DNA of 64,000 nt, from contig NIVC01000822.1 in NCBI GenBank assembly GCA_002269645.1, positions 310,805 to 374,804 of the forward strand, in the 5' to 3' direction. Both the position numbers and the translations under genes were made by a program. Positions 14,924 through 64,000 of the stretch are shown one piece after another (the stretch's first letter is position 1; each line of letters starts with the position of its first letter). Source of the stretch: Macrostomum lignano. Taxonomy: Eukaryota. The notes below the pieces were generated by a model that worked only from the letters and a program-made list of their open reading frames with translations, was not told the origin of the DNA and searched no databases.

Positions 14924-15034
14924 CCGGCCCCGCGCCCTAGCCTATGCGGGTTTTTCAGGGATTAGCGAAATGGGCGACGCTCGCCTCCCCGCTGCGTCTT
15001 CGGACCGCCCTGCAGCTAAGTCAAGTAAGTCAAG

Positions 15035-16261
15035 CGGCTAAGACTGCCCGCCGTCTAGCTGACGCTGGCATTCGAATCCAGCCCCATAGGGCCATGGCTA
15101 AGCGCAAGCTTCTGCCCCACGCCGACCTCTGCCTCAAGGACTTGAGAGACAGCGGCGGGCTCCACGTCCTATCTGACGGCGAACCCCGCACTCTCAACCT
15201 CTTTCAGCGCTACAAGATCACCATGCCCTCTAGGGATGCTGCCAATGACCACTGGAATTTCCAGGAGGTCCATTGCTACACGGACGGATCCATCAAAGAC
15301 GGTCGCGCCGGCTTTGGGGTCTGCTTCATCATCAACGGCCGCGTAATTGCCACGCATGCCCAGCACACTGGTAGACTCTCCACAGTCTTCGAGAACGAAG
15401 TCCTTGCCATCAGCTCTTGCGCTGCAGAGCTGAACGCCAAGGGTACGAGAGGAAAGACTATTGTCATCTACTCCGATGGCCAAGCGGCCTTACAGGCCCT
15501 TTGCCACACCAAAACGAACTCCCGGACAGTCGCCGACTGCGCTCGGCAGCTCAACCTCCTGGCCAGTAGCAATACTGTCAGGCTGAAGTGGATCCCAGGG
15601 CACGCAGGGTTTCCGGGGAACGAGCTGGCAGACACCCTCGCCAAGAGGGGCGGCTTTGGCTCTTTCTTCGGCCCTGCCCCCCCCCCGGTCCCTATGCCCT
15701 TGACAGTCATCAATCGTCAGATCGACGACTGGGCTGACTCCCTCCACAGGGACAGATGGGCGGGCACCCAAAACTGCCCCGGTAATCTCGTGCCGCGGTT
15801 CCTTGCCCGTCTCGCAGGCTCAGAAACATCCTTCTGAACCAGAATCGGAAGGATATTCGAGCCCTTGTCATGACCCTCACGGGCCATGGCTACCTCGCCA
15901 GGCAATGCTTCCTCCGAGGTGACCTCGAGAGCGAATTTTTCCCCTTTTGCGAGTGCGACAATGAAGATGCTCAGCACTTTGTTCGTCACTGCCCTTTCTT
16001 TACCAGAGACCGGCTACGCTACCCGTCTTGACGAGGTTTGCCAACCCGACAGCATCTCACGGCTCATCCAGTTCCTTCGGGTGACTAGACGAGCCAATTT
16101 CTTCCCAACGGAAGATCACGCTGCAGGACGGACCGGCGGACCACCCTGACCGGCCCCACGCCTCTGCCTGTCTGCGGGCCTTCAGGGGCTAGCGGAATGG
16201 GCGACCCTCGCCTCCCCGCTGTGTCTACGGACCACCCTGCAGCTAAGTCAAGTAAGTCAAG
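15035..16261 (+). mobile_element. 5'-truncated sister-subfamily LINE segment (RNase H, CCHC, 3'UTR and tail) fused directly behind the first element
   Basis: Starts at AAKTARRL, homologous to AAKTTRRL near 13801; CYTDGSIKDG...WIPGHAGFPGNELADTLAK; ends TAAGTCAAGTAAGTCAAG followed by the TSD GGCCGAAAGCCG at 16262-16273. Confidence 0.9.
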
Positions 16262-20600: not shown

Positions 20601-21217
20601 ACAGACCCATTAGTATTACGGTGCCATTTAAAAATGTTTTAATCTTGGCCGTTTCAATGTCGCCATCGCCTGAAAATGAAAACATGGAACAACTAGTGAA
20701 AATTTAAAACAAAACATATTCTATGCTTTAATATCTTAGCGCGACATCAAAGGGTCGTACCTTTCACGATTCCACACAGCAGCCACCCTTGCGACACGCA
20801 GGATACTTCACCGGGCTTTACACCTCCCTGATCAACTGCACTGGCAGAGACGCATTTTTCTTGGAGAACGCCTATCACTAGCTGCTTGGAGAAGTCGCAG
20901 TTGTCCCACAGGTAATGCAGCAGGTCTTGAAGCGAGCAGTTGACATTACTCGTACTTGGCGATGCGTGGCAAATAAGCTTCAGAGCCTGCAGAGAAGTCA
21001 GGCCGAGAGCAGCGACATCGCTTAGAAATGTGTCCGAGCTGTCAAAGAATATTTCTATTTTTTTGTTGCTGACCGCATCCTTGAGTCTGAACTCTGCTCC
21101 AGGGGAGGAATCGCCATGCGAACTCTCAATAAAGCTGTCCGACTCTACTGAGTATTGCTGACCCAGGTTAACTTGTCTGTCAAATGAATGCAGCCAAGCA
21201 GATTGACGGAATGACAT
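17608..21217 (-). CDS. Two-exon gene (21217-20761, 20669-17608), 1172 aa: stonustoxin/MACPF-CDC-like N-terminus (tentative), two FN3 domains, septin/AIG1-like GTPase, Cys-rich module and coiled coil
   Basis: A 91-nt GT-AG phase-1 intron (GAAAG|GTACGA ... TTTTCAG|GC) joins the 156-aa and 1025-aa ORFs in frame (GIVK-G-DGDIE). FN3-like segments: LEQLKMGTAYQVSY and LVGYRITV. GTPase motifs: GETGSGKT, DTPG, TFAD. Confidence 0.88.
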
Positions 21218-22574
21218 TTTTACTTCTGAAATATGATCATTGTGTTTAGAATTTAATATTCAATCAAGATTTTTTTGTATGAAACAGACACACAGGACAG
21301 TTGGGTGTCTTAAATTCATTTACCACACTTTCCCAGATCTCCGTTTACCATCGGTTTTGAAATGCATGAAATTTTTTCCAAACCAATAGAACTAATTTTC
21401 TGAAATCGATCCCATGCCTAGAAACAAACAACTCATTTTTAGTATATCACACTTACTATTAGGTTCTACCTATCTAAACCCTTGTTTAAATCATGATATG
21501 TTCAAAAGAATTCAAATAATTTTTAGGGCTTCCCAAATTGAATATTTAAATTTTTTAGCAAAATTTAGCAACATTTTTTTGAAAAAGGTACTTTTGATAC
21601 GAAACAAAGTATGCATCAAACCTTAATTTAATCTAATAAATTTATAAACACGGCTGATTTTCTAATGATACATATTCGTTTCACTCATACTAACATTTCT
21701 AGTGATAAGTGACAACCATATAATATATAAGACAAGGAAAATGTCTAAGTTTAATTCTATTATCTAAACATAACCTAAGATTAGGAATAATGTTATCTAC
21801 TATCCACCAACTTTAAGTGGTGTTTTATTCAAACTGTTAGTCTTTGCTCAAAAGAAATGTTCACACAGCATTGCAACGCAATCTGCAGTTGGGCCATCAC
21901 TGATTCACGATAACAAAATAATACATGTAGGTCATTTAAAATGATTCGGGGAAATTGGTTTCAGCGGTATTGTAAACCTGCTTTTACGCTTATGAAATTG
22001 TTTAAAGTAAAAAAGTCGAATATTATATCCTACTATTTACTTATATTTTCTTTATTCTAAAACGATAAACATCCTCGCTATAAAAATAAAAGGCATTAGC
22101 TCGTATAAAGATAATCAGATCTTGGTTTTGAATGACCACACTACTTAAGTATTCAAATGCATAAATACATACAGTGAATAGGTAGTTGAGTAGATAAATA
22201 AGTGTATAAATTAATCAGCAGAGGACTCAGTAGTGACTTATTTTTTATCCACGTACAACGTGCAAGTAAATCATTTGAAAACGATGCACAAAATCCAAAA
22301 GTGGTTTTAAATATGCAAGTTTGTACGCGGATTAACAAATATCAACGCACCGTTTTTATTACGTAGCTTTGCTTGAAATAAAATCGGTGGAATTTTTATA
22401 TAATTTTTTTGTTTATTTTTGCACAAAATATAGACCTCGAGAATCGTATTTTCGCATTGAATAATAATGAGCATTTCAACTGCTCATTGAAAAGATTCGC
22501 TTTCGCCAAAATGGATTTTTCCGTTTTAAAGCCCTGATTTTAGGTTAGGCGCACTCAAGATTCTATATTAGTGG

Positions 22575-23776
22575 GATCAACTGAAACCAGATCTAGCCAA
22601 AGTGAAGGCAATTCAGGACATGACACCACCACAGAATGTCAGTGAACTTGAGTCCTTCCTGGGTCTCGTTAACTTCAGCGGAAAGTTCATCAGAAACTTA
22701 GCTGCACTGACCAAGCCGCTTAACCGCCTAAGGAAGAAAAATGAGGATTATGTGTGGACAACGGAGTGCCAGGGAGCATTCGACAAAATCAAGGCTGCAC
22801 TCTCCGATCAATCGAGTCTCCAAATATTCGACCCCGAGAAGCCGATTGAACTGGAATGCGACAGTTCTCAGCGAGCTCTAGGTGGAGTGTTGACACAAAG
22901 CGACCAAGTCGTGCTATACATGAGAAAAACATTGTCTGAAGCTGAGACAAAGTATTCGCAAATAGAACAGGAAGGTCTTGCATTGGTTTGGTGAATTCAA
23001 AGATGTCATCGGTTCTTGTACGGCCGGAAGTTCACACTGATAACCGACCACCGACCGCTCACTTTTTTATATTCGCACCAGACATAGAGTTGCCGACCAG
23101 AGTTTCAGTTCGATTGCTTTAGACACTTAGAGACAAATAAGAACTGTAGACACTCGTGGCCAGAACCGGATAATCCCTGGGAGCGAGTACACATCGACTT
23201 CGTCGGCCCAATAGAAGAAAAATACCTACTCATACCTACTCATTGGATGCATACTCGAACTACCCCGAAGTGTTCATAACAAACGACATGAAGGCCCAGA
23301 CAGTTATCACAAGACTTCGAAGACTATTCTCACAGTTGGGTGATAGTGTATCGTATCTGATAATGGCCCCAGCTTTGTTAGTGAAGCCGCGACCGGCTGG
23401 CTGGCCCAGATTGGCTGTGCGCACATCACAGCGCCCGCCCACCATCTCCAGAGCAACGGGATTGCAGAGCGGATCGTGAGGACTGTCAAGGACGCAATCA
23501 AAACATCAAAACAAACGGTTTTTCGCAAAGGAGCATTGACAGATTCCTATTGTACTACAGAGCAGCCAAAGGGAAGCAGCATGCATCACCTTCCGAGCTA
23601 CTGAACGGCAGGAAAATCCAACTGCCGATGTTGGAGAGCAAGGCTCAGTCCAAGTGGAACTCAGCAGGACAATCACTCATCTACCGCGCATATCGAATTC
23701 TCACGAGCCACGAACTGTGCGATTCGTCAAGACGCTTGGCAGCAACACAGCAATCCTATATACTAAAAATGAAAAT

Positions 23777-23825
<49 letters not shown>

Positions 23826-24179
23826 AATCGATTAGAGAAAAAATGGCTTAACCGATTTTCATGAGACTTGCACTCACTGAAGGCTCACTACGATCAACTT
23901 CGAGTCTGTGAAGGTTCCTGAGACGCAAAAGAGCTCTGAAAGTTGAAAATACTGCTCCTGAACCCAGTGAAGCTGCTACTGGATGCGATGACGATCGAGT
24001 GGTTCCATCTTTGCGAGACAGTTGGACCAAAGAAGATGGAGAACCCACAGCAGCCAAGCACTGAGGCTGGAGGCCCGCCAAGGTCATCGCCCAGGCGGAG
24101 CGAGCGCTGGGCACTGAAGCCTCGCATGTTTTATCGTACCTGAGTTCAGACCGTGCACCGCCCTGCAGAAGAGGGAGGA
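22575..24179 (+). mobile_element. Gypsy/Ty3 pol relic (RT end, RNase H, integrase) ending in a polypurine tract
   Basis: KVKAIQDMTPPQNVSELESFLGLVNF, LECDSSQRALGGVL, YSQIEQEGLALVW, KFTLITDHRPL, WERVHIDFVGP, DAYSNYPEV, SNGIAERIVRTVK, PRRSER; PPT AGAAGAGGGAGGA ends at 24179. Confidence 0.9.
23777..23824. repeat. (CTTG)n microsatellite
   Basis: About 12 perfect units. Confidence 0.95.
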
Positions 24180-24320
24180 TGTTGTGGGTGAAACAAAAGT
24201 TCCTCATAGACATTTATTTACGTGCCTGCGCAAATGTTAAATGAAGAGGTCGAACGGACCAAACTAGAAAAGAAAAAAGAATAAAATGAATTAAGAGCTG
24301 AGCTCAGCGTCAATGAGCCA
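24180..24320 (+). mobile_element. Putative short LTR (TGTTG...CA) between two Gypsy fragments
   Basis: Begins immediately after the PPT, ends in CA and is followed by PBS-like TGGATACGAG. Confidence 0.45.
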
Positions 24321-24359
24321 TGGATACGAGCTACATTGAAGGCTTAAAGACAAAATACA

Positions 24360-24772
24360 ACAGCGGCAAGATGAATCATCTGGCCAAGGCTTGCTTCAGC
24401 GGCCGCTCAAAGATCAACGCACTGCAGCCAGAGCAAGATCAGCCAGCCGACCAGTCGGTGAGCGAAGTGTTCTGCACCCTCAGCGCCAAGGACGACGGAG
24501 CCAAATTCAGCATCGGCATCAACGGACAGGAAATCCGCACCCTAATTGACAGTGGGGCAAGCTGCAACGTTCTGGACAACGCGACGTTCCGCAGAGTATG
24601 CCGCCGTAGTGGCACGCCGCTGACACCGTCCAACACCAAAGTCTTCGTACTCGGCGCCAGCGAACCGCTGGAGGTGGCGGGCCAGATCCAGCTACCAGTC
24701 AGCGCAAACCGCCACGAGTTGGAGGCCACCTTTATCATCATCAAGAGCAGCTGCACTCTGATACTCGGCTAA
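24360..24772 (+). mobile_element. Gypsy gag zinc-knuckle remnant and aspartic protease
   Basis: NHLAKAC (half CCHC) followed by INGQEIRTLIDSGASCNVL. Confidence 0.85.
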
Positions 24773-37698: not shown

Positions 37699-39524
37699 AT
37701 ACTGACTGCACTACCCACATTGGCACCCACATTGCCACCTTTACCATGAGCCTTCACATAGTATGCTCACAATTTGTGAGGTTGGTTGAATTTTATTATC
37801 TTGATAAAAGAGTAGACACATACATGGGGGGGGGGTTAAAAAGCTGGCCTAAAATTTATCAACCCCCTAAGCTGCTCTGATCTTGTTTGTCTTATTTTAT
37901 AAATACAACAGTAACAACACTGGGAAGCACAGTTGCAGATGGTGGGCAATAGCTAATAGGCCCAATTGATTCAAATTCATTTGGCAAATTGGTATATATA
38001 AAATTTCTACCAAATGTTAGGAGGTCAAATATTTGAAAAAACAAAGTTTTTAATGCTTTTGATGCTTGAATTTTTTACTTGAATGCCTACTATTGGTGGC
38101 TGAGTGTTGTAGTGTGCTTATATACTTAGCAACATCAAAAAGTTGCCATCACAAAAGATTCTGTCTGTGATTGTCACTTTTGAAAATGTAGACAAAAATT
38201 TCTTCAATCTTTGCAAGTGATGCAACTTGATACGCTGTGGCAGATTTGAATTGAAGAATAAAGTAAAGGGAGTAGTGTGCAAGGGTTTTGTTGGATGGAT
38301 TAAAGCTATCAATCAGTTTTCTTGTATCTGTTTTTTTTCAGAATAGTCCAAGAGAAATTGCTCACATGGTGCATAGAGTGGCAAATTTTCAATATTGCTA
38401 AGTAAATATTAAACAATAAAAAATCAATTTGGAAGTGTGTCAAATATGAAAAAAAAATTTTCATGCTTTTAATGTTAGAATTATGAATTTCATTACACCT
38501 ATAAGGGAAAATGCAGTAATATTAACTATTACTCATTAGTTGGCCTATATTATCTTGTATTTTGAATTCCTAGTATAATTTATATTAAAAGTTGAACTAA
38601 ACTTTAGTTCAAATTTTTTTTAAGTTTAATAATATTGGCAATGCAAAATGCATAGTTTAATAAACTATTATATAGGACTTATACATATGAGTAGTAAGGT
38701 TTGAATAATGCTTCATAATATATTTTAGAATCAATTTATTCAACACTGCCAAAAATAAAAAAACATATTTTTGGAATGATATGGCAATTTGCAAATAACC
38801 ATTTGTCACATTTTTAGAACTGTCTAATATTACACCATGGTTATAATATAACAAGGAGATTTTAAAAGTAATGCTTTAAGGCTTTTTTTAGGTTTTTTAA
38901 ATGGAATTTTAGCAAATGAGTTATTATAAAATAATTTAAGCAGTAATTTAGCAATAACAATGTCAAAAATATCTTTTTTTTGCTTTGTTCCCTTGTATTT
39001 CATAGTACTCTTCTTTTTAGTTTCATATAACAATCTTTAATTCATTTTACAATAGTGCTCTTTATATGGTGACTCTCGATAATTACATTTAGCAATATCT
39101 CTTTATAGATTGTACTTTCCTGTCATAGCACTTTAGCTTTGATATGTATACCTATCATTTTATATAGTTCCCTTTTCTCTTATCGGCAGAACTCATTTCA
39201 TAAAGCATTCCTATGTGACGCCTGATGCCCTTATTTTAACTAGGCATTCTAATGACTGGCTTTTGACATCCCTAGTATGCCCTTAGAGGCATAAACAGAG
39301 GTGCCAACACAATGCCTTGCAAATTGCAATTCCTCATATTAACCTAGGCTGAGCTTAGCAAGTTTGGTTCAAGTAATAGCAGTGGGTCAAAGATGGCTTT
39401 GTTTGGATATGGCATAAATTTAGCTCATTCTAGTAATTTTTATGTTTTACCATTCAATAGAACAGATGTGCAAGGAGTTATGGCTAAAATTAAAGTTTAT
39501 AGGGACATTCTTATCATTCACAAT

Positions 39525-39781: not shown

Positions 39782-39982
39782 CACAGCCCAAAATCATTTG
39801 CAGCACTCTTTTTTGTCATATATTCTACTCACAGTAACACTTGGAAAATTATAATTAAATCCTGCAAGGTCTGAATTCAGCCTAGAGATCCTAACTGAAG
39901 TGGCAGCAATGTGAAACAGAACAAAAATTATTTATTGTCAAGTCTACAGAACAAAAATCCCCAATTCCCAGCCCGCCAGTCC

Positions 39983-40345
39983 ATGGCTCCCCGACGTGAG
40001 AAGAAAAAGAGCGCCCTAAAAGACGTGGTGACCCGGGAGTACACCATCAACCTGCACAAGCGCATTCACGGCGTCGGTTTCAAGCGCCGGGCGCCGCGTG
40101 CAATGACGGAGATTCGCAAATTCGCGGAGAGAATGATGGGCACCCCGGACGTGCGGCTGGACACCCGGCTGAACAAGTTCGTGTGGAGCCAAGGCGTCCG
40201 CAATGTGCCGTTCCGCGTCCGCGTCCGCCTGGCCAGGAAGCGCAACGAGGACGAGGACAGCGCGCACAAGCTGTACACCCTGGTCTCCTACGTGCCCTGC
40301 GCCGAGTTCAAGGGCAAGCAGACCATCAATGTTGAGGCCGAGTAG
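39983..40345 (+). CDS. RPL31: 60S ribosomal protein L31, intronless CDS, 120 aa
   Basis: [40 protein letters not shown]...[38 protein letters not shown]. Confidence 0.97.
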
Positions 40346-40547
40346 TGCGAGGTTAAACTTGACTAGATGGGACTGACTTGCTGATAGATTGCGAGGGCAG
40401 GTTCTTGATTGAGCATGAAATACAGGGGCTGACGCTGTTGAGCGTGTTTTTAGCTGGATTGCACTGTCTCTGCGCTTGTTCTTTACTTTCATATTATTTA
40501 GAGAGCATCTCTACCTGTGCTTGTGGCTTGTGATTAGTTCTAGAAAG

Positions 40548-41048
40548 GTAGTTGCTGTGCCAGCCTCCCAGATCCTCAGTTGCTGGGCCACCAGCCTCCC
40601 AAATCCTCAGTTGCTGGGCTATCGCCCTCCCAGACCGTCAGTTGCTGGGCCAGCCTTCCAGATCCCCAGTTGCTGGGCCAGCCTTCCAGATCCCCAGTTG
40701 CTGGGCCAGCCTTCCAGATCCCCAGTTGCTGGGCCAGCCTTCCAGATCCCCAGTTGCTGGGCCAGCCTTCCAGATCCCCAGTTGCTGGGCCAGCCTTCCA
40801 GATCCCCAGTTGCTGGGCCAGCCTTCCAGATCCCCAGTTGCTGGCTGGGCCAGCCTTCCAGATCCCCAGTTGCTGGGCCAGCCTTCCAGATCCCCAGTTG
40901 CTGGGCCAGCCTTCCAGATCCCCAGTTGCTGGGCCAGCCTTCCAGATCCCCAGTTGCTGGGCCAGCCTTCCAGATCCCCAGTTGCTGGGCCAGTCTCCCA
41001 GATCCCCAGTTGCTAGGCCAGCCTTCCAGATCCCCAGTTGCTGGGCCA
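40548..41048. repeat. 28-nt minisatellite CAGTTGCTGGGCCAGCCTTCCAGATCCC, about 17 units
   Basis: Head-to-tail units without spacers. Confidence 0.95.
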
Positions 41049-41119
41049 CCGTCACATTCCAACTTTCGAATCTCCAACATTTCACCGACCGGCTTCTTTA
41101 GACAGCCCTTTTTCTCCAG

Positions 41120-44100
41120 CTCCTACTGCGACCGTCAGCTGCCCGACTGTCGCTGCTGCTGTGCCGCAGGTTGTTCAGCAACAGCGGCGGCGGCGGCTCC
41201 GAGCTGGTGTACGGCATTCACCCGGTCTGGCAGGCGCTGTTGTCTCGCCGTCGTCGAATTGACGAAATCTACGTTGACATTCGACACCAAGGGCAAAGCG
41301 ACGTCATAGAAGACTTCGGCTGCGACAGCTCCAGCTCGGCCGAGCTGCGCCAGCTCATCGCTGCCAGCTATGCTCACCTGGTCAGGTACGCTGACAGGCG
41401 CGAACTGGCCGCTCTGTGCCGGGGTCGGGCGCATCAAGGATTCGCGCTGCGGTGCGGACACTTCCCTGTGCCTGTGCTGCCCGGCTGTGCCTCCGACTGC
41501 CGCTCTGAGCTGGCGGCGAGTCGGCTGTGTGTGCTGCTGGACCAGGTGGGGAAGAGATGCAGGGGAGAATGGGGAAGAGATGCAGGGTGAATGGGGAAGA
41601 GATGCAGGGTATAATGGGGAAGAGATGCAGGGGAGAATGGGCAAGAGATGCAGGGTATAATGGGGGAGAGATGCAGGGTATAATGGGGAAGAGATGCAGG
41701 GTAGAATGGGGAAGAGATGCAGGGTAGAATGGGGAAGAGATGCAGGGTATAATGGGGAAGAGATGCAGGGTAGAATGGGCAAGAGATGCAGGGTATAATG
41801 GGGGAGAGATGCAGGGTATAATGGGGAAGAGATGCAGGGTATAATGGGGAAGAGATGCAGGGTAGAATGGGCAAGAGATGCAGGGTATAATGGGGGAGAG
41901 ATGCAGGGTATAATGGGTGAGAGATGCAGGGGAGAATGGGCAAGAGATGCATTGGAGAGAATCGGCAAGAGATGCATTGGGGAGAATCGGCAAGAGATGC
42001 ATTGGGGAGAATCGGCAAGAGATGCATTGAAGAATGGGCAAGAGACGCATTGGAGAGAATCGGCAAGAGATGCATTGGAGAGAATCGGCAAGAGATGCAT
42101 TGGAGAGAATCGGCAAGAGATGCATTGGGGAGAATCGGCAAGAGATGCATTGGAGAGAATCGGCAAGAGATGCATTGGAGAGAATCGGCAAGAGATGCAT
42201 TGGAGAGAATCGGCAAGAGATGCATTGGAGAGAATCGGCAAGAGATGCATTGGAGAGAATCGGCAAGAGATGCATTGGAGAGAATGGGCAAGAGATGCAT
42301 TGGAGAGAATCGGCAAGAGATGCATTGGAGAGAATCGGCAAGAGATGCATTGGAGAGAATCGGCAAGAGATGCATTGGAGAGAATCGGCAAGAGATGCAT
42401 TGGAGAGAATCGGCAAGAGATGCATTGGAGAGAATGGGCAAGAGATGCATTGGAGAGAATGGGCAAGAGATGCATTGGAGAGAATCGGCAAGAGATGCAT
42501 TGGAGAGAATCGGCAAGAGATGCATTGGAGAGAATCGGCAAGAGATGCATTGGAGAGAATCGGCAAGAGATGCATTGGAGAGAATCGGCAAGAGATGCAT
42601 TGGAGAGAATCGGCAAGAGATGCATTGGAGAGAATCGGCAAGAGATGCATTGGAGAGAATCGGCAAGAGATGCATTGGAGAGAATCGGCAAGAGATGCAT
42701 TAGAGAGAATCGGCAAGAGATGCATTGGGGAGAATCGGCAAGAGATGCATTGAAGAATGGGCAAGAGATGCATTGGAGAGAATCGGCAAGAGATGCATTG
42801 GAGAGAATCGGCAAGAGATGCATTGGAGAGAATCGGCAAGAGATGCATTGGAGAGAATCGGCAAGAGATGCATTGGAGAGAATCGGCAAGAGATGCATTA
42901 GAGAGAATCGGCAAGAGATGCATTGGAGAGAATCGGCAAGAGATGCATTAGAGAGAATCGGCAAGAGATGCATTGGAGAGAATCGGCAAGAGATGCATTG
43001 GGGAGAATCGGCAAGAGATGCATTGAAGAATGGGCAAGAGATGCATTGGAGAGAATCGGCAAGAGATGCATTGGAGAGAATCGGCAAGAGATGCATTGGG
43101 GAGAATCGGCAAGAGATGCATTGAAGAATGGGCAAGAGATGCATTGGAGAGAATCGGCAAGAGATGCATTGGAGAGAATCGGCAAGAGATGCATTGGAGA
43201 GAATCGGCAAGAGATGCATTGGAGAGAATCGGCAAGAGATGCATTGGAGAGAATCGGCAAGAGATGCATTGAAGAATGGGCAAGAGATGCATTGGAGAGA
43301 ATGGGCAAGAGATGCATTGGAGAGAATCGGCAAGAGATGCATTGGAGAGAATCGGCAAGAGATGCATTGGAGAGAATCGGCAAGAGATGCATTGGAGAGA
43401 ATCGGCAAGAGATGCATTGGAGAGAATCGGCAAGAGATGCATTGGAGAGAATCGGCAAGAGATGCATTGGAGAGAATCGGCAAGAGATGCATTGGAGAGA
43501 ATCGGCAAGAGATGCATTGGAGAGAATCGGCAAGAGATGCATTGGAGAGAATCGGCAAGAGATGCATTGGAGAGAATCGGCAAGAGATGCATTGGAGAGA
43601 ATCGGCAAGAGATGCATTGGAGAGAATCGGCAAGAGATGCATTGGAGAGAATCGGCAAGAGATGCATTGGAGAGAATCGGCAAGAGATGCATTGGAGAGA
43701 ATCGGCAAGAGATGCATTGGAGAGAATCGGCAAGAGATGCATTGGAGAGAATCGGCAAGAGATGCATTGGAGAGAATCGGCAAGAGATGCATTGGAGAGA
43801 ATCGGCAAGAGATGCATTGGAGAGAATGGGCAAGAGATGCATTGAAGAATGGGCAAGAGATGCATTGGAGAGAATCGGCAAGAGATGCATTGGAGAGAAT
43901 CGGCAAGAGATGCATTGGAGAGAATGGGCAAGAGATGCATTGGAGAGAATGGGCAAGAGATGCATTAGAGAGTATCGGCAAGAGATGCATTGGAGAGTAT
44001 CGGCAAGAGATGCATTGAAGAATGGGCAAGATCACATGAATCAGCACGCACCCGCAGGTGGTGGACATCCTTAACTTCGGCAGTCTGCTCCGCACCTGTC

Positions 44101-44546
44101 TGTTCTACGGTGTCAGCCCGGTGCTCATACCGGGCACCCACAGCTGCCCCCCTCTGCCAGTGGTCTCCAAGGTGAGCTGCGGCGCTCTGGAGGCCACGGA
44201 CTTGCGCGCCCTGCCCGCCAGCAGCGCTGAGTTTGTGCGCCAATGGCGCCAGGCTGGCTGGCTGGCGCTAGGCAGCTCGGGAGGCGATGACGGCGCCCCT
44301 GGAGTGCCTTGCGCCGGCGTCGATCGGCTGACGGAGCTGCTGCCGCATCCGCCCAGCGGTCCGGTGCTTCTGCTGCTTGGCAGCGAGGGCTCCGGCCTGT
44401 CAGCTGAGCTTCTGAGCCTCTGCAACCTGGTGCTGCGGATTCCACAAGCTGGCGCCGCCTGCGCCATGCCGCATCTGAATGTGGGAGTGGCGGCCGGCAT
44501 CCTGCTGCACTGCGTCTCGGGCTGGCTGCGGTCTGCTGCTGCCTGA
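41120..44546 (+). CDS. MRM1: SpoU/TrmH-family rRNA 2'-O-methyltransferase, MRM1-like; exons 41120 (or 41102)-41545 and 44058-44546; no genomic ATG
   Basis: ELVYGIHPVWQAL, RAHQGFAL, LLDQ|VVDILNFGSLLRTCLFYGV, LLLGSEGSGLS, LNVGVAAGILLH. The phase-0 GT-AG intron joins the SpoU motif exactly. The N-terminus LLLRPSAARLSLLLCRRLFS looks like a mitochondrial presequence. Confidence 0.85.
41546..44030. repeat. Intronic minisatellite: ~24-nt units grading into ~84 copies of the 25-nt unit GCAAGAGATGCATTGGAGAGAATCG
   Basis: Fills almost all of the 2512-nt MRM1 intron. Confidence 0.95.
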
Positions 44547-44574
44547 GGCCTCCGGACTGCGGAGTTTTGCGCTT

Positions 44575-44658
44575 TGCCTGTCTGTCTGCCTGTCTGCCTG
44601 CCTGTCTGCCTGCCTGCCTGCCTGTCTGTATGTCTGTCTGTCTGCCTGCCTGCCTGCC

Positions 44659-44714
<56 letters not shown>

Positions 44715-44778
44715 CCTCTATTTGTGTCTGTCTGTCTGTCTGTCCCTCTATTTGTGTCTGTCTGTCTGTCTATCTATA

Positions 44779-44821
<43 letters not shown>

Positions 44822-44865
44822 GTCTGTCTGTCTGTCCATCTATCTGTGTCTGTCTTTGTCTGTCG
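44575..44865. repeat. (TCTG/CCTG)n microsatellite
   Basis: Direct inspection. Confidence 0.95.
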
Positions 44866-45228
44866 TCTGACTGTGTCCTGTCTGAGGATTTGTGGTTTTT
44901 AACCTGTCTAAATTCTGACTGGGCTTTCTCACCTCTGCTCTATACTTCACTCCCTGCCCTCTCTTCTATTGAAGCCTCCCCTCTCACTTCTACGGTATCT
45001 TCCTGGTTTTATACTAGATCTATAATGATGCATTTTTCCAATCCAAGCGTTTTTAAATGTAATTAATAACGAAGGAATAATCATATGAAAGTCGATTTTT
45101 GCGCCAGGATAGTTTTCATTGTTATACTCTTTTTTTTACATTTTTTCATTTGTACCGATTTTTTTCGTTTTAAGAATTAATAGATGAAATATTGAACTCG
45201 CTTTCAGAGAGACCAGAGCATCCCCACA

Positions 45229-47806
45229 ATGGCCGCTTTCTTAGACAGACAGCGAACTAACCAAAATAATAATAATTACTACTATTGCGATCCCGAGTCT
45301 CAGTCCGCACTGCAGTTGCCCATGGCAACCAGCTTTGCCACCACCGATGTTGCCTCCTCGCTGGATGACAGCCTCCTGCTGCCTCCGGATGCCTTCCTGC
45401 CGTCGGCTGCCGCTGCGGCGCCGCACTCGGTTCGGTTTGTCCCTGCCGACGCCCCTCCTGCGGCGGCTCCGTGCCGCTCCTGCCGGCAGCTGGAGCGCGA
45501 CCTCGCCCGGCAGCGTCGAGAGTTGGAGCGGCTGCGGCGGCAGCAGCTGGAGACGCAGAGCCTGCTGGATCAGGAGAGGCAGCAGCGGATGGAGCTGGCT
45601 GAGCCAACGCCGCGGGTGAGCCGAGCGCCTGTTGATGTACAGACAAATCTTTTGAGTATTAGTGTCTGTAGATATTGAGCAGACATCTGTAGGCACATGT
45701 TTTGAGCGGTAGAAAATCAGGAATCTATAGGCGCCTGTAGATCTGCAGCGGGTTTTTCTATAGACATGTGTAAACAGAAGCTTAAATCTATAGGGCATCG
45801 TGGTTACACAGGTCTCTATAGACTCGTGGATCTCCAGATATCTCTAGGTATCTATAGACACGTGTAGATCTACAGCAGGCATCTATAGACACTTGTAGAG
45901 ATCTATAACACTTTTCTATAGACGCTTGTAGATCAATGGCAAGCATTTATGAACACTTGTACGTCTATAGCCGACGTCTACAGAGATATTTAGATCTACA
46001 GTAGGAATTTATAGACACATGTTGATGTACAGCAGGCATCTATGGACACATGTAGATCTATACCACGTCTCTATTGACGCTTGTAGATCTATGACAGGCA
46101 TCTATAGACACATGTATATCTACAGACACAGAGATGTAGATCTATGACAGGCATCTATAGACACATGTAGATCTACAGACACAGAGATGTAGATCAATGA
46201 CAGGCATCTACAGACACAGAGATGTAGATCAATGACAGGCATCTATAGACACATGTAGATCTATTCGATTGTCAAGTTGTTTCTCACAACCTAGACTGCT
46301 TTACAATGCAGGACTGGGACGACAGTCGCGACGCCCTGGCCACCAGAGCCGCCCAGCTTGAGGCTGAAAACGAACGCCTTCGAGCCGACGCTGAGCTTCG
46401 GGAACGCCGGCTGGCCCTGCAGTCCGAGCTGCTTGCCGAGCCCAGCGCTGGCGGCGAGGCTGCGGCCTGGAGGCCCCGGCTGTACAAGGCGCTGGTGCAG
46501 GCCGAGGCTGAGCGCTGGGCGCACGACAGACAGCTGAGACAGACGGTAGGTGGGGCAGACAGACAGGCAGACAGACAGACACTAGGACAGACAGGCAGGC
46601 AGACATGGACACTAGGACAGACAGGCAGGCAGACATGGACACTAGGACAGACAGGCAGGCAGACATGGACACTGAGGCACACTCAAAGGTCACTGAGAGT
46701 CCCAATCCCCACCCCTGTAGGAGGCCGAAGCCGAGGCCGCAGTTTCCGACCTTCGCCGCCGCCTAGACGAGGCGGAGGCGCGCGCTGCGGCCGCCGAGCG
46801 CAAGCTGGCCGCTGCGGACCGGCTGGCGGAGCGGCTTCAGTCGGACGCCCGGCGTCTGGCAGAGCGTCGGGCGCGAGAGGCGAGCGAAGCGGCCGAGGCT
46901 GTTAAATCGGCCAGGGCAGCCTTCGAATCTGCGGCCGGGCTGTGGATGGAGCGCCTGGCCGACATGGAGGGGCGCCTCGGCCGCCTGGCCGACACCACCG
47001 ACCAGCTGGCCGCGTCCGAGAAGGTGCGGAGGCGGCATGTTTTACTGTCTGATTTAATAGTCTCAATCTTACCCACTTGGTTAATCTCACTCCTAAATTG
47101 TCAATCTCACCCCACTCCATCAATCTCATCCCACTCCATCAATCTCATCCCACTCCATCAATCTCATCCCACTCCATCAATCTCATCCCACTTCATCAAT
47201 TTCTCCCACTCCATCAATCTCACCCCAGTCCATCAATCTCATCCCACTCCATCAATCTCATCCCAGTCCATCAATCTCACCCCAGATCGTCAATTTCACC
47301 CCAGTCCACCAATCTCACCCCAGTCCATCAATCTCACCCGCTCGCAGCTGTCCGAACTCTCCTCGGTGTCCGAGCTTCGCGCCGCCCTGTCCGAAACTCG
47401 ATCAGCGCTGGACTCGGAGCGCCAGGCGCGCCGCCTCGAAGCTGGGCGCCACGCGGACGCGCTGGACGCGTCGGCGCGCGAGCAGGCGAAGCTGGCGGCC
47501 GCGCTGGCCCAGTCGGAGCGCCGGCTGCAGCGGGAACGCGAGGCCGCCGAGGCTCAAGGCCGTCAGGCTGTTGAAGACTTTCAGCTGGCCACGGAGCGAC
47601 TGCGGGATCGGCTGCGCCTGGTGGAGGGCGAGCGGAACCTCCTGCAGGCCGCGGCGGCGGCGGCCGCCTCAGAGAAGCAGCAGCAGCGAGCAGCGCGCCC
47701 GCACTCGGCGATGCCTGTCGCCGGGTCCGCCATCGAGGAGTCCGAGGACCCGCGACTGCATGCCGCTGTTCGCGACTTGAGACAGATGCTGGCCAACTCC
47801 GGCTGA
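45229..47806 (+). CDS. Coiled-coil protein, tentatively CCHCR1-like; exons 45229-45615, 46312-46545, 46721-47023 and 47348-47806 (460 aa)
   Basis: All three introns are GT-AG phase 0 and give one continuous frame. AWRPRLYKALVQAEAE and RLRLVEGERNLLQAA resemble CCHCR1 RWREKVFALMVQLKAQ and LQELERDKNLMLAT (by eye). Confidence 0.75.
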
Positions 47807-60486: not shown

Positions 60487-60976
60487 TCACACGTAGTTCT
60501 CAATGGCCTCCATGTTGGACTCGAGGTGCGGCGTCAGCGGCGACGCCACGAAGGTCGGCTGCTGCTGCAGGCTGTGCAGAGCGGCGCCGATGTCCGACAG
60601 GCCGCCGTTGCCGGCAACGATGCGAAATCGCCGCCGCCGCCACCTCCGCCGCCGCTGGGGAACGCGAAGGCCGTCTCAGCGGTGGCGCTAGTGACCGGCG
60701 GCGCCGAAGAAGCGCCAGTTGCTGCTGGCGTTGACGTCGCAGCCGCACTGGAGGTCGCCGGGATGACGCTGAAGCCGCTGCGGCTGCTCGCCAAGGAGAT
60801 GCGGCTGCTGTACCTGATCAGCTCCGTTGCGCCCGCCGGAGTCTCCGACTGGACCAGGTCGGGCGTCAGCATCCTGCCGTGCTGCTGCTGCGGCTGCTGG
60901 CTGTTCAGGAGCCGTTGCTAGTGCCGTTAGTCGCTGGCGGGAGGCGGCGGCGGCAGCTGCCATCATCAACATGTGG

Positions 60977-61025
<49 letters not shown>

Positions 61026-64000
61026 CGGCCAGGTGATATGAGTAGTACGACGGGTGCAGCGGCGCCTCCTGAGCCGACATCCGGGAGCCCGGCGAGAAGC
61101 CTCCGCCGCCGCCGCCGCCACCATAGCCGTAGCCGCCGCAGACGCCGCCGTTGCCGCAGCCGCAGTCGGAGCCCAGGGCCGGGGGCGGCGGGCAGTAGTA
61201 GCCGTCCTGCGGTGCCATCCCGCTGGACAGGCTGGCGCGGTAGCCCAGCTGCACCGCCTGGCCGCACACCGGGTGGCCCGCAGCGATGGCCGCCGGCGAA
61301 CCGCCCGACCCGTTGGTGACGTCGCTGGAGTTGGTCGACCGCATCGACTTGCCGACGCCCGGGCCGCCGCCTCCGTCGCCGCCGCCGCGACGGCACTGCA
61401 GGATGGCGGTGACGATGACCGCGGCCAGCAGGATGGCCACCACCACGGCGCTGCCGATGGAGATGCCAGCACGATCTCGAAGGACAGGCCGGCGCTGGCG
61501 GTGCTCGCCTGAGTGGTCGACGCGGCGGCATTCAGCGGGCGTCGAAGCTGCGGGTCTCGTAGACGGTGACCGGGCCGTCCAGCACCAGCAGGGAGAAGCT
61601 GTAGGCCGCCTGCGGGTCGGGCAGCAGGATGCTGGCGCGGCCTGAGCGGACCTCCGACTCCAGCAGCTGTCGCAGGACGCAGCCGGGCTGCACAGCTTCA
61701 CGTACACCCCGGTGTAGTGCGGCGACATCGGCGCTGTGAACTGGATCTCCAGCTGCCCGGAGGTCACCTGGGCCGCCACCGATGCGTCCGGGATCAGCGG
61801 CAGCTTCCGGGTGGTCAGCGCCACCTCGTCGGTGAAGGGGCTGACGTTGATCGCGCCGCCGTAGAAGTTCTCTGCTCGGACTCGCGCATAGTAGGTGGCC
61901 TGCGACTCCAGCGCGGTGACGGTCTCGGTGACGGGCAGGCCGAAGCCGGGGTCCCGCAGGCCGGTCTTCTGGTTGGCGACGCTCCACACGGAGCTGCCGA
62001 GCGGCCGCCACTGCAGCGTGAAGGTCTGCTCGAAGCCGCCGTTGAATTCACTGCGCCAGCGCAGGTTGGCGGACACCGCCGTGGTGTTCAGCACCTGCAG
62101 GCCGCTGGGGGTGGCGGGCGGCCCCGGCCGGTTCAAGCTGAAGGTGAAGTCGCGAGTGCCGACTGAGTTGGCCACGGTGCACACATAGTTGCCGTAGTCA
62201 GCCGAGGTCACCTCCGGGATGACGAGGCGGTAGGTGAGGTTCACCGCGCTGCTGACGGTGGACAGGCGCGGGTTCAGCGCCTGCTTGGTGCCATCGGCTC
62301 CGAGGCGCTGCCAGACGGCCCCGCTGGGCGGCGGGTTGGCCGTCACCCGCAGGAGCAGCTCGGCCGGCTGTCCGAGTGGGGAAGACACGGCCAACTGGGT
62401 GCCCGGCCAGGCGGCCGGGGCGAAGGTCAGGTTAAGGGCGGCCGAGGCTGTGGCGGAGCCACCGCGGGACCCCACCGAGCACTGGTAGACGCCGTTGTCT
62501 CCTGAGCTGGCCGACGCGATGCTCAAAGTGGACGTTGCGCTGGCGAGCGTCGCCCAGACGCCGCTGGCATTCCGATGTCGCCATACGAAGGTGAAGCCGC
62601 CGCCTGCCGTCGGGACTCCCGCCGGTTGTCAGGCAGCTCAGCGTCACCGGGTCGCCTTCGCGAGGCGAGCTGGGCGACACTGTGACGTTGACGGATGGCG
62701 GGTACAGCACCAGCACGGAGGTCGACTTGGACAGGGCGCCGATTGCGGCGCTGTCGTAGACGATGGTGCAGGTGTACACCGTGCCGTTGTCTGCCCGCCT
62801 GGTCTGCGTGACGAGCAGGCGGCTGCTGACTGCAGTGCCGAGGTTCTCCGCCGGCTCCGTCGTTGCCACCGCCTGCACGGTGACATTCTCGGCCGAGCTG
62901 GCGCCGCCGCGGACTGCCGGAACCAGTGCACCCGGGCTGGCGGGTTCGCGGAGCCGGCGCGGCACAGCAGGGTCAGCGCCGTGTTCTCCAGCACCCCGTC
63001 GGCCGGGCTAGCCGTCAGCGCGGAGCTGCTCGGCAAAAATTTCACCTCCAGGGCGACGTCTTTGCGGCCGATCTCGCGCGAGTTGTACAGCAGGACGCAG
63101 CGGAATTTGAAGCCGTTGAGGTCGCGGCTGGCGGCGATGTCCAGCCGGCTCTGCAGCTGCTTGGCCGAGTTCGGCCCGTCTGTCTGGCTGACGGACACGC
63201 GGCTGTCCGAGATTTGCTCCTGCAGGCCCAGCGGGCTGATGGAGTACCAGGCGGCCGAGCTGGGCGGGTTGCTGCTGGAGGTGGCCGAGCAGCTGAACTG
63301 CTTGGCCGGCCCGCCATCGGTCGCCGGCCCGGCGGCTGCTGCAGCAGCTCGAGGCCGCTGGGCGGAAAGGAGACCGAAAAGGCGATCGGGGAGCTCCAGA
63401 CCTCCGTGCCGATGATGCCGACGCTCTCCGCTTTGCAGTAGAATTTCGCCGCGTTGTCGGCCGCCTCCAGAGTGACGGTGGCCGCCGGCAGCTCCTCGCG
63501 CGACTGTCCGAGGCGCTCCCGGTAGAACCGGCGCAGCGGCTCCGGCCGGCCGCCGCCCACCTGGCAGGCGAAGGTCACGGAGACGCCGGCCTGCAGCGGC
63601 GACGACAGGCTGCTGGACAGGCGCACGGAGCTTGGCGGATAGTTGACGGTGAGGCCGGCCTCCCGGCTGGCGCTGACGCCGACTTCGTTCTCGACGGTGC
63701 ACACGTAGACGGCGTCGTCTGTGCGCTGAGCGCTGGCGATGGTCAGGCGAGAGGCGGTGGCGTTGGGCCCGGAGCTGGAGTGCGGGATGCTGAGGCCGTC
63801 GCGCCGGGTCCAGGAGAACCGCAGGCTGCCCACAGTGGGCTGGGCGACGCACAGGGCGGCTGTCGACTGCGACTCCACGACGGTGGCGGCGGTGAAGTCC
63901 AGGGAGTCGATGGCGGGGCTGGGGTAGACTGTGAGGCTCCTCGGGGTGCTCTCGTAGGTCACGTGCTTGCACCCCCAGTCGCCGGAGAAGCCGGTGTCCA
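60487..64000 (-). CDS. Nephrin-like Ig-superfamily receptor, 3' part: at least 6 Ig, FN3, TM and a polyQ/Gly-rich tail; several apparent 1-nt frameshifts
   Basis: Ig signatures DDAVYVC, DNAAKFYC, DLNGFKFRC, DNGTVYTC, DNGVYQC, DYGNYVC; FN3 LRWRSEFNGGFEQTFTLQW...YYARVRAEN; TM ISIGSAVVVAILLAAVIVTAILQC. The last frame reads ...ESNMEAIENYV* with the stop at 60487-60489. Confidence 0.85.

What the first reader, a model, noticed from the sequence alone, without database searches (positions are those of the whole stretch)
41095..41545. MRM1-like gene has no AUG of its own; the start codon may be donated by the spliced leader
Seen: the coding exon has no in-frame Met, and an in-frame TAG lies at 41099-41101. 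Two AG acceptors (ending 41101 and 41119) both open in phase 0 onto a presequence-like N-terminus. Established: flatworm SL exons end in AUG, which can act as the initiator Met. Inference: SL-AUG spliced to 41120 gives MLLLRPSAARLSLLLCRRLFS... (305 aa), or to 41102 gives MTALFLQLLL... (311 aa). Trans-splicing would then create the mitochondrial targeting peptide. The acceptor at 45207 is likewise in frame with the next gene's ATG (21 nt upstream). Alternative: a cis intron from the GT at 40548 links it to the RPL31 3' region, but I found no usable ATG there either.
Basis: partly seen in the sequence, partly recalled or inferred. Interest (0 to 1): 0.72.

Follow-up and report, generated by a model that had tools for sequence, protein, structure and literature searches.

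The report
Flatworm MRM1 gene borrowing its start codon
A mitochondrial rRNA methyltransferase (MRM1) gene of the flatworm Macrostomum lignano has no start codon of its own and most likely takes it from the AUG at the end of the trans-spliced leader. This trick is already documented in other flatworms, so it is a well-supported but unproven new example, not a new mechanism.

Summary
The window is the last 64 kb of Macrostomum lignano contig NIVC01000822.1. The reading frame opens right after TAG 41099-41101. AG acceptors end at 41101 and 41119, both in phase 0. There is no in-frame ATG before codon 284.

The two-exon gene (41120-41545 and 44058-44546) encodes an intact RlmB/MRM1-type 2'-O-methyltransferase: AlphaFold pLDDT 87, best fold match E. 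coli RlmB, best sequence matches animal and flatworm MRM1. It is missing from the GenBank annotation.

The M. lignano spliced leader ends in ATG. Acceptor 41119 (CTCCAG after a pyrimidine tract) is the only nearby AG that fits the published trans-acceptor motif [T/C]TNCAG. Both neighbouring genes have annotated CDSs that begin at, or 2 nt after, an AG acceptor. No ATG-bearing cis exon fits between RPL31 and the acceptors.

A 98.7%-identical paralog keeps the ORF and acceptor 41119. The closest ortholog, from a reef metagenome, also lacks an ATG and has a phase-0 CTGCAG acceptor giving M-LRRALSAVLL.

No transcript data could be reached, so trans-splicing here is inferred. The paralog also has an in-frame upstream ATG, which is a real rival. 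SL-AUG initiation is established in flatworms (Cheng et al. 2006), so this is a new member of a known kind.

The parts
39972..40345 (+). Upstream gene RPL31 (eL31). The inferred mRNA 5' end is at 39972, after AG 39970-71; its own ATG is at 39983 and the stop ends at 40345. The SL-ATG would be out of frame here.
   Evidence: the GenBank CDS is 5'-partial ('RQSMAPRR...') from 39974, which is 2 nt after ttcccAG|. Pfam Ribosomal_L31e. 97% identical to M. lignano BOX15_Mlig004813g1.
40346..41119 (+). Intercistronic region / presumed outron, 774 nt. Of this, 499 nt (40550-41048) is a 28-nt tandem repeat x17.5. It holds no usable ATG.
   Evidence: The paralog L001 has only 2 repeat units and 351 nt in total. 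The repeat-adjusted distance is about 275 nt, under the 1-kb operon threshold of PMC8629364.
41099..41101 (+). In-frame TAG that closes the frame upstream.
   Evidence: It is CAG (CTTCAG|, motif match) in paralog L001.
41106..41119 (+). Pyrimidine tract plus CTCCAG: the most likely SL trans-splice acceptor (junction 41119|41120, record position 351923|351924).
   Evidence: it is the only AG in 41040-41200 matching [T/C]TNCAG (PMC8629364), and it is in phase 0. It is identical in L001.
41120..41545 (+). Coding exon 1. It has no ATG of its own. It encodes the presequence-like residues LLLRPSAARLSLLLCRRLFSNSGGGG (41120-41197) and then the SpoU_sub_bind domain.
41546..44057 (+). Cis intron (GTGGGG...CCGCAG), 2512 nt. 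Nearly all of it is a 25-nt tandem repeat x101 (41552-44031).
   Evidence: The intron is 339 nt in L001. The exon join restores the conserved motif LLDQ|VVDILNFGSLLR.
44058..44546 (+). Coding exon 2: SpoU methylase (SPOUT knot) domain, with stop TGA at 44544-44546.
44547..45207 (+). 3' UTR (end not determined) with (CTGT)n at 44578-44874, then the intercistronic region up to the next acceptor TTTCAG| at 45202-45207.
45208..45231 (+). 5' end of the downstream coiled-coil gene. The GenBank CDS starts flush at 45208 and the gene's own ATG is at 45229. The SL-ATG would be in frame, 8 codons upstream.
   Evidence: L002 15235 corresponds to window 45208.

Best explanation
The locus is an unannotated M. 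lignano ortholog of MRM1, the mitochondrial large-subunit rRNA guanosine 2'-O-methyltransferase (bacterial counterpart RlmB). It sits second in a same-strand, operon-like run: RPL31, MRM1, then a coiled-coil gene.

The proposed mechanism has three steps. First, the pre-mRNA is resolved by spliced-leader trans-splicing. Second, the 35-nt SL (...TTATTGCATG) is joined to the acceptor CTCCAG| at 41119/41120, so its 3'-terminal AUG becomes codon 1 of a 305-codon ORF (MLLLRPSAARLSLLLCRRLFS...). A minor form may use 41101/41102 and give 311 aa. Third, the first ~20-27 residues act as a mitochondrial presequence, perhaps cut after RRLF|S, which fits an R-3 motif.

Without trans-splicing at one of these two sites, no AUG-initiated MRM1 protein can be made from this copy.

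Shown here: the organism, the SL sequence (from the literature), the frame, the absence of an ATG, the motif match, the MRM1 identity, the fold, and conservation in the paralog. Inferred: that this gene is transcribed, that it is trans-spliced at 41119, that translation starts at the SL AUG, and that the product is imported into mitochondria.
For: (1) Organism and SL. The window is M. lignano NIVC01000822.1. Its single SL is CGGTCTCTTACTGCGAAGACTCAATTTATTGCATG, and about 30% of genes are trans-spliced (PMC8629364).

(2) Only 41119 among the 7 AGs in 41040-41200 fits [T/C]TNCAG, and it is in phase 0.

(3) In the modelled mRNA the SL AUG is the first AUG and opens the full ORF. All other AUGs give ORFs of 97 aa or less.

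(4) Neighbouring GenBank CDSs begin at AG| acceptors: flush at 45208, and at 39974, 2 nt after the AG at 39970-71. Other M. lignano genes do the same (RPS21 and NAC in L003/L004). The annotation pipeline set such boundaries from SL-containing reads (PMC5730564).

(5) Intergenic distances after subtracting repeats are about 275 and 364 nt, within the published operon criterion.

(6) No ATG-started ORF segment ending at a GT in phase 0 exists between RPL31's stop and the acceptors.

(7) In paralog L001 the ORF is intact, with 12 substitutions in 933 nt, no indels and dN/dS 0.27. Excluding the 18 nt upstream of acceptor 2, which carry none of the substitutions, that is 12/915 (1.3%), against 4.0% plus many indels in the flanks (Fisher p = 5e-4). 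Acceptor 2 is identical.

(8) The closest ortholog, P0165/L005 (36% identity, reciprocal best hit), also has no in-frame ATG after its upstream stop. It has one phase-0 acceptor, CTGCAG|, which gives M+LRRALSAVLLTQRS.

(9) The N-terminus has 27 residues before the conserved core, with 4 Arg, no Asp or Glu, and 67% L/A/S/R. AlphaFold predicts a helix at residues 6-19 with low pLDDT ahead of a confident core. Its length matches schistosome MRM1 presequences.

(10) SL-AUG initiation is established in flatworms (Cheng et al. 2006, as cited in PMC9851317, PMC12582326 and PMC3510090).
Against: No transcript, SL-junction read or protein evidence for this gene was reachable. The gene is absent from the GenBank annotation, although that annotation deliberately dropped transcripts overlapping repeats.

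Paralog L001 has CAG instead of the TAG and an in-frame ATG at L001 10587, open through to the ORF. An own-ATG start is therefore possible there if a transcript keeps that region.

The two copies are too similar (dS 0.028) for ORF intactness alone to prove that this copy is functional.

The organism behind L005 is unidentified (a coral-reef metagenome), so its SL is unknown.

The SL AUG has a weak Kozak context (U at -3). Motif 3 reads HLN instead of the near-invariant SLN. No mitochondrial-targeting predictor was available.
Confidence: 0.6

Rival explanations
1. This copy is a recently disabled duplicate. The functional copy is the paralog on NIVC01001319.1, which starts at its own genomic ATG (L001 10587), about 40 codons upstream. 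The window copy lost that start (ATG to TTG at 40552), gained the TAG, and had its frame broken by expansion of the 28-nt repeat.
For:: L001 has an in-frame ATG directly after a stop, open through to the MRM1 ORF, and CAG where the window has TAG; 2 repeat units in L001 against 17.5 in the window. dS is only 0.028, so a dead copy would still look intact.
Against: The L001 extension runs through an unstable 28-nt repeat whose unit is not a multiple of 3. An ATG somewhere in a ~40-codon open upstream stretch has roughly a 1-in-2 chance expectation. Acceptor 2 is perfectly conserved and would remove that ATG if used. The distant ortholog L005 also lacks an own ATG. The CDS is about 3-fold less diverged than the flanks and has no indels. 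The ATG lies only 215 nt after RPL31's stop, leaving little room for a separate promoter.
Confidence: 0.13
2. Translation starts at a near-cognate codon in exon 1, whether or not the mRNA is trans-spliced. Candidates are in-frame CUG at 41126, 41147, 41153, 41156 and 41159, or UUG at 41171.
For: One search lists six in-frame CUG/UUG codons upstream of the conserved core. Non-AUG initiation of mitochondrial isoforms is known in other eukaryotes (general knowledge). PMC9851317 reports NUG starts in SL contexts.
Against: All have poor context (C or T at -3, except UUG 41171). If the mRNA is trans-spliced, scanning ribosomes meet an in-frame AUG first. Starts at or after 41147 would shorten or remove the presequence.
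Confidence: 0.1
3. A cis-spliced upstream exon, upstream of or overlapping RPL31, supplies the ATG and joins acceptor 41101 or 41119.
For: Parasitic flatworms share acceptors between cis- and trans-splicing (PMC12582326). One ATG segment with a consensus GTGAG donor in phase 0 exists at 37746-37775.
Against: No candidate lies between RPL31's stop and the acceptors. The one consensus candidate would need an intron spanning the whole RPL31 gene.
Confidence: 0.05
4. Both copies are untranscribed or non-functional relics.
For: No GenBank gene model and no protein from this gene in 5.8 billion database sequences. Motif 3 has a Ser-to-His change.
Against: No other MRM1 homolog from M. lignano appeared in any search. 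Both ORFs are intact, with dN/dS 0.27 and a confident fold. The annotation excluded repeat-overlapping transcripts by design.
Confidence: 0.07

Closest known systems
Flatworm SL 3'-terminal AUG used as initiator methionine (Cheng, Cohen, Ndegwa & Davis 2006, J Biol Chem 281:733; seen here only through citations in PMC9851317, PMC12582326 and PMC3510090)
   Same: The SL ends in AUG, the AUG is in frame with the main ORF, and there is no other usable AUG. In S. mansoni 28% of trans-spliced mRNAs are in frame and more than 40 cDNAs need the SL AUG. In E. granulosus 143 of 187 SL clusters are predicted full-length from the SL ATG, including mitochondrial proteins (an NADH-ubiquinone oxidoreductase subunit and COX6B), and this usage is conserved across Neodermata.
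   Different: This case is in a free-living, early-branching flatworm (Macrostomorpha), a group for which none of the papers I read reports SL-AUG initiation. It is inferred from genome sequence only.
MRM1 / RlmB (23S rRNA Gm2251; human mt-16S Gm1145; yeast Pet56) 2'-O-methyltransferases
   Same: It has the SpoU_sub_bind plus SpoU_methylase architecture. The best fold match is E. coli RlmB (1GZ0). The best sequence matches are animal and trematode 'rRNA methyltransferase 1, mitochondrial'. The motif residues N148, R154, E252 and N283 are invariant.
   Different: It is very divergent (about 31-36% identity to any relative). Motif 3 has His in place of the near-invariant Ser. Like other flatworm proteins, motif 1 reads D-[IV]-x-N-F instead of D-P-x-N-L. 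Trematode orthologs have their own genomic ATG 0-10 nt after a likely acceptor.
M. lignano SL-resolved operons (Ustyantsev & Berezikov 2021, PMC8629364; Wudarski et al. 2017, PMC5730564)
   Same: Same-strand genes have repeat-adjusted spacing under 1 kb. The intergenic regions are inflated by simple repeats. Both neighbours have annotated CDSs beginning at AG acceptors (flush, or 2 nt downstream for RPL31).
   Different: The middle gene is missing from the GenBank 'coregenes' annotation, so its operon membership is inferred.
Alternative trans-splicing that sets mitochondrial versus cytosolic isoforms in Trypanosoma brucei (IleRS; PMC3273800)
   Same: The choice of trans-splice acceptor decides whether a presequence is translated.
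   Different: In trypanosomes the SL carries no start codon and the AUGs are genomic. Here both candidate acceptors keep the presequence, and the SL supplies the AUG.

Membership tests
SL-AUG-initiated flatworm mRNA | The organism's spliced leader ends in AUG | tested here: met
   The window is M. lignano. The published SL is ...TTATTGCATG and contains a single ATG. No SL RNA gene lies in the window itself.
SL-AUG-initiated flatworm mRNA | The mRNA is actually trans-spliced at the proposed acceptor | not testable with these tools
   No M. lignano RNA-seq or cDNA is reachable. Indirect support only: the motif match at 41119, neighbours whose CDSs start at AG|, and the operon-like spacing.
SL-AUG-initiated flatworm mRNA | The SL AUG is in frame with the main ORF, with no intervening stop | tested here: met
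   both 41102 and 41120 are in phase 0, giving ORFs of 311 and 305 codons.
SL-AUG-initiated flatworm mRNA | No genomic in-frame AUG could give an N-terminus that covers the conserved domain | tested here: met
   the next in-frame AUG is codon 284 of 305. This is not met in paralog L001 if the region upstream of the acceptors is retained.
SL-AUG-initiated flatworm mRNA | Translation starts at the SL AUG in vivo | not testable with these tools
   This needs ribosome profiling, N-terminal proteomics or reporter assays.
MRM1 / RlmB family | N-terminal SpoU_sub_bind (L30e-like) domain plus C-terminal SPOUT methylase domain | tested here: met
   Pfam PF08032 (31 bits) and PF00588 (73 bits). AlphaFold pLDDT 87, pTM 0.86. 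The top Foldseek hit is RlmB 1GZ0, E = 3.7e-18.
MRM1 / RlmB family | Closer to MRM1 orthologs than to MRM3, TARBP1 or TrmH | tested here: met
   In the profile search, trematode, echinoderm and vertebrate 'rRNA methyltransferase 1, mitochondrial' score E = 1e-39 to 1e-33, ahead of bacterial RlmB. No sequence hit to MRM3 chains appears even at E <= 10. By fold, MRM3 ranks 28th or lower. The NCBIfam RlmB equivalog scores 91 bits, below its 160-bit cut-off, as expected for a divergent eukaryotic member.
MRM1 / RlmB family | Conserved SPOUT motif residues: motif 1 N..G...R, motif 2 G.EG.G, motif 3 SLN | tested here: inconclusive
   N148, R154, G250, E252, G255 and N283 are invariant across 40 sequences. 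The near-invariant S281 is His in both M. lignano copies.
MRM1 / RlmB family | Mitochondrial localisation through an N-terminal presequence | tested here: inconclusive
   Composition and helix only: 27 residues, 4 Arg, no acidic residues, RRLF|S fitting an R-3 motif, helix at residues 6-19. TargetP and MitoFates were not available.
M. lignano operon (PMC8629364 criterion) | Same-strand genes, repeat-adjusted intergenic distance under 1 kb, downstream genes trans-spliced | tested here: inconclusive
   The distances (about 275 and 364 nt after removing repeats) and strand are met. The trans-splicing status of the middle gene is unknown.

The most novel reading that the evidence does not exclude
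MRM1 lost its genomic start codon before M. lignano and the unidentified GC-rich reef animal behind contig L005 diverged (their proteins are only 36% identical). On this reading the gene has depended on the SL's AUG ever since. Synthesis of a mitochondrial-ribosome maturation factor would then be hard-wired to trans-splicing in a deep flatworm lineage. Standard annotation pipelines, which trim the SL and then look for ATG-started ORFs or drop repeat-overlapping models, would systematically miss or truncate such genes.
Probability: 0.3. Interest if true: 0.45.

Novelty: new member of a known kind. Interest (0 to 1): 0.3.

Why it matters
If confirmed, this would extend obligatory SL-AUG initiation from parasitic flatworms to the free-living model M. 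lignano. That species is genetically tractable (transgenesis is available), so the coupling between trans-splicing and translation start could be tested directly there.

It also recovers an MRM1 ortholog that is missing from the public annotation. And it flags a practical problem: gene models built from SL-trimmed transcripts will call such ORFs 5'-partial or miss them altogether.

It does not reveal a new mechanism.

Tried and rejected
(1) An exact look-up of the 120-aa RPL31 found nothing. The annotated product is 5'-partial (123 aa, P0044), and that version did locate the contig.

(2) An Rfam scan of the window gave no hits, and no SL RNA gene or SL sequence lies in the window or the fetched loci.

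(3) I searched for transcript evidence. The databases hold no M. lignano protein or Logan contig for this gene. The supplements of PMC5730564, PMC5816591 and PMC5173321 do not list MRM1. PMC8629364 has no supplements held.

(4) Mlig006560 is a 'TRANSSPLICED' gene with a SpoU Pfam score of 74 and two copies. I considered it as this gene and rejected it. It is a reciprocal best hit of human RNMTL1/MRM3 (E = 7e-16), whereas this protein has no detectable sequence match to MRM3 chains and is RlmB/MRM1-like by fold.

(5) By my own slip, the single representative-library search was run with exon 1 alone. It gave only 6 weak hits, but one of them, P0165, turned out to be the closest ortholog.

(6) The second RPL31 locus (P0045; L003/L004) is a different neighbourhood (RPL31-RPS21-NAC) without an MRM1 gene.

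(7) Cheng et al. 2006 and Wasik et al. 2015 are not held. They are cited only through other papers.

(8) I recalled the S. mansoni phytochelatin synthase paper as a possible precedent for an SL-made mitochondrial isoform. The paper itself says there is no evidence that those transcripts are trans-spliced, so I dropped it.
Full report
**Origin of the window.** An eL31 (RPL31) ORF at 39983-40345 is 97% identical to an annotated Macrostomum lignano protein and 100% identical to a 123-aa 5'-partial product (P0044). P0044 lies on two contigs of assembly GCA_002269645.1 (Mlig_3_7). Locus L002 from NIVC01000822.1 is an exact substring of window 29974-50345. The window is therefore the last 64 kb of that contig, and record position = window position + 310,804.

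**The observation.**
- TAG at 41099-41101 closes the frame.
- AGs end at 41101 and 41119, both in phase 0.
- Exon 1 runs to 41545 (CAG|GTGGGG). A 2,512-nt intron follows, almost entirely a 25-nt tandem repeat x101. Exon 2 runs from 44058 to 44546.
- Between RPL31's stop and the end of exon 1 the only ATGs are 40367 and 40415, each followed by a stop within six codons, and the out-of-frame 41370.
- I modelled the mRNA with the published SL attached. The SL AUG is then the first AUG and the only one that opens the 305- or 311-codon ORF. The next in-frame AUG is codon 284.

**What the gene is.**
- Pfam finds SpoU_sub_bind plus SpoU_methylase.
- The best NCBIfam model is RlmB (91 bits, below the equivalog cut-off).
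- The best solved relative by sequence and by fold is E. coli RlmB, 1GZ0.
- AlphaFold with a 40-sequence alignment gives pLDDT 87 and pTM 0.86. The core from residue 28 onward is confident. The first 27 residues have low confidence but include a predicted helix at 6-19.
- A single-sequence search found only about 31% identical bacterial and dinoflagellate proteins. A profile built with the closest homolog ranks animal MRM1 first: trematode, starfish and vertebrate 'rRNA methyltransferase 1, mitochondrial', E = 1e-39 to 1e-33, ahead of bacterial RlmB.
- MRM3 chains give no sequence hit and rank 28th or lower by fold.
- Flatworm sequences share D-[IV]-x-N-F in motif 1 where others have D-P-x-N-L.
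- N148, R154, E252 and N283 are invariant. The near-invariant Ser of motif 3 is His in both M. lignano copies.

So the gene is a divergent but structurally intact MRM1 ortholog. It is not in the GenBank annotation. That annotation excluded transcripts overlapping repeat annotations (PMC5730564). This gene has a repeat-filled intron and a (CTGT)n 3' UTR, so its absence says little about whether it is expressed.

**The trans-splicing context.**
- M. lignano has one 35-nt SL, CGGTCTCTTACTGCGAAGACTCAATTTATTGCATG. About 30% of genes are trans-spliced and about 15% lie in operons. The top motif at trans-acceptors is [T/C]TNCAG. Operons are defined by a repeat-adjusted spacing under 1 kb (PMC8629364).
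- Of the seven AGs between 41040 and 41200, only 41119 (CTCCAG, after CCCTTTTT) fits that motif, and it is in phase 0. 41101 is CTTTAG.
- Spacing to the neighbours is 774 and 661 nt, or about 275 and 364 nt after subtracting tandem repeats.
- The GenBank CDS of the downstream gene starts flush at 45208, right after TTTCAG|. RPL31's CDS starts 2 nt after TTCCCAG|. The same flush pattern appears at RPS21 and NAC in loci L003 and L004.
- The annotation pipeline cut transcripts at sites defined by SL-containing reads and then called ORFs. I therefore read these flush 5'-partial CDSs as experimentally mapped trans-splice sites. That reading is my inference.

**Cis-exon alternative.** No ATG-started segment ends in phase 0 at any GT between RPL31's stop and the acceptors. 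In the 6 kb upstream only one candidate has a consensus GT[AG]AG donor (37746-37775), and it would need an intron spanning the whole of RPL31.

**Paralog.** NIVC01001319.1 (L001) carries a second copy.
- The MRM1 ORF is intact, with 12 substitutions in 933 nt (7 synonymous, 5 non-synonymous, dN/dS 0.27) and no indels.
- Excluding the 18 nt upstream of acceptor 2, which carry none of the substitutions, the CDS shows 12/915 (1.3%). Non-repeat flanks differ by 31/772 (4.0%) and have many indels (Fisher p = 5e-4).
- The intron is 339 nt there and the upstream 28-nt repeat has 2 units instead of 17.5. The repeats have expanded without touching the exons.
- Acceptor 2 and its pyrimidine tract are identical in both copies.

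Two differences matter for the interpretation. The TAG is CAG in L001, which makes acceptor 1 a motif match there. L001 also has an in-frame ATG at 10587, immediately after a stop and open through to the ORF. The window has TTG at the equivalent position (40552), and its expanded repeat breaks the frame. This is the strongest rival: an own start codon in one copy and a disabled second copy. Four points count against it:
- That ATG lies in an unstable 28-nt repeat region.
- It is about as likely as not to occur by chance in a 40-codon open stretch.
- It sits only 215 nt after RPL31's stop.
- Trans-splicing at either acceptor would remove it.

**Orthologs.** The closest relative found is P0165 (36% identity over the full length, reciprocal best hit). 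It comes from Logan contig L005 of run ERR14224705, a Tara Pacific coral-microbiome sample. Its ORF GC3 is 86%. Its annotated 'M' is a TTG chosen by a bacterial gene caller. After the in-frame stop at positions 97-99 there is no ATG before the conserved core. The only phase-0 AG is CTGCAG| at 157, which would give M+LRRALSAVLLTQRS..., a textbook presequence start. The organism is unknown, but the protein shares the flatworm-type motifs. This is suggestive evidence that the no-ATG architecture is conserved. Trematode MRM1 genes do have genomic ATGs. They sit 0 nt (Fasciola...gcatAG|ATG) and 10 nt (Heterobilharzia...tttcAG|gtgtctacca ATG) after likely acceptors. In such a layout an in-frame SL AUG could make the genomic ATG dispensable.

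**Presequence.** With the junction at 41120, 27 residues precede the conserved SELVYGIHPV. They contain 4 Arg, no Asp or Glu, and 67% L/A/S/R, with peak helical hydrophobic moment at ARLSLLLCRRL. RRLF|S fits the R-3 cleavage pattern (general knowledge, not tested). Schistosome MRM1 proteins have 24-residue basic N-termini ahead of the same core motif. No dedicated targeting predictor was available.

**Comparison with what is known.** SL-AUG initiation in flatworms is established (Cheng et al. 2006; I could not read the paper itself).
- PMC9851317 reports that the SL AUG is in frame in 28% of S. mansoni trans-spliced mRNAs and that more than 40 cDNAs require it.
- PMC12582326 states that all reported flatworm SLs end in ATG.
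- PMC3510090 shows that 143 of 187 E. granulosus SL clusters are full-length from the SL ATG, including mitochondrial proteins, and that this use is conserved in Neodermata.
- None of the M. lignano papers I read discusses the SL AUG as a start codon.

The case is therefore a new member of a known kind. It is plausible and well supported by indirect evidence, but unproven because no transcript data were reachable. I put 0.6 on SL-AUG initiation at 41119|41120 and split the rest among the rivals listed.

Noticed in passing
window 40550-41048 and 41552-44031; L001 10577-10650 and 11151-11488: Two tandem arrays have expanded massively in this copy compared with the paralog. One has a 28-nt unit (x17.5 here, x2 there) and the other a 25-nt unit (x101 here, filling a 2.5-kb intron that is 339 nt there). 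The adjacent exons are untouched. This fits the published remark that repeats inflate M. lignano operon spacers.
   Followed up: partly
window 45208-45231; L003 11623; L004 12678: The GenBank CDSs of several M. lignano genes are 5'-partial and start flush after a CAG acceptor, with the gene's own ATG 7-10 codons downstream in the same frame. Examples are the coiled-coil gene here and RPS21 and NAC in L003/L004. The SL AUG would add a short N-terminal extension to each unless ribosomes skip it.
   Followed up: partly
window 39972-39985: RPL31's inferred trans-splice site (TTCCCAG|CC) puts the SL AUG out of frame, 11 nt before the real ATG. This would create a short overlapping upstream ORF ([16 protein letters not shown]) on a highly expressed mRNA, which implies leaky scanning past the SL AUG.
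   Followed up: no
window 44484-44492 (MPH in ...ACAMPHLNVGVAAG...): Motif 3 of the methyltransferase reads HLN instead of the near-invariant SLN. The change is in both M. lignano copies but not in the reef ortholog or in trematodes.
   Followed up: partly
L005 (Logan ERR14224705 contig 7949633), 1-1289: A coral-reef metagenome contig encodes the closest MRM1 relative (GC3 86%, no intron, no ATG of its own). It is probably from an unidentified reef-dwelling flatworm or similar animal.
   Followed up: partly
window 2255-4039 (+) and 17611-20703 (-): Two copies, in inverted orientation, of an AIG1/septin-like P-loop GTPase ORF (595 and 1031 codons open) share near-identical stretches.
   Followed up: no
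window 11555-15834 (+); 22572-24769 (+); 4163-6086 (+): Transposable elements are present: a GC-rich non-LTR retrotransposon (endonuclease, RT, and RNase H twice), LTR/gypsy-type RT-RNaseH and protease fragments, and a THAP9/P-element-like TNP ORF.
   Followed up: no
window 60691-63999 (-): A very GC-rich (61-70%) immunoglobulin I-set plus fibronectin-III cell-adhesion gene runs off the end of the contig.
   Followed up: no
supplement of PMC5816591 (Mlig006560.g1/.g2): M. lignano also has a separate trans-spliced, neoblast-enriched SpoU gene annotated as RNMTL1/MRM3. The species therefore appears to keep both mitochondrial SPOUT rRNA methyltransferases.
   Followed up: partly
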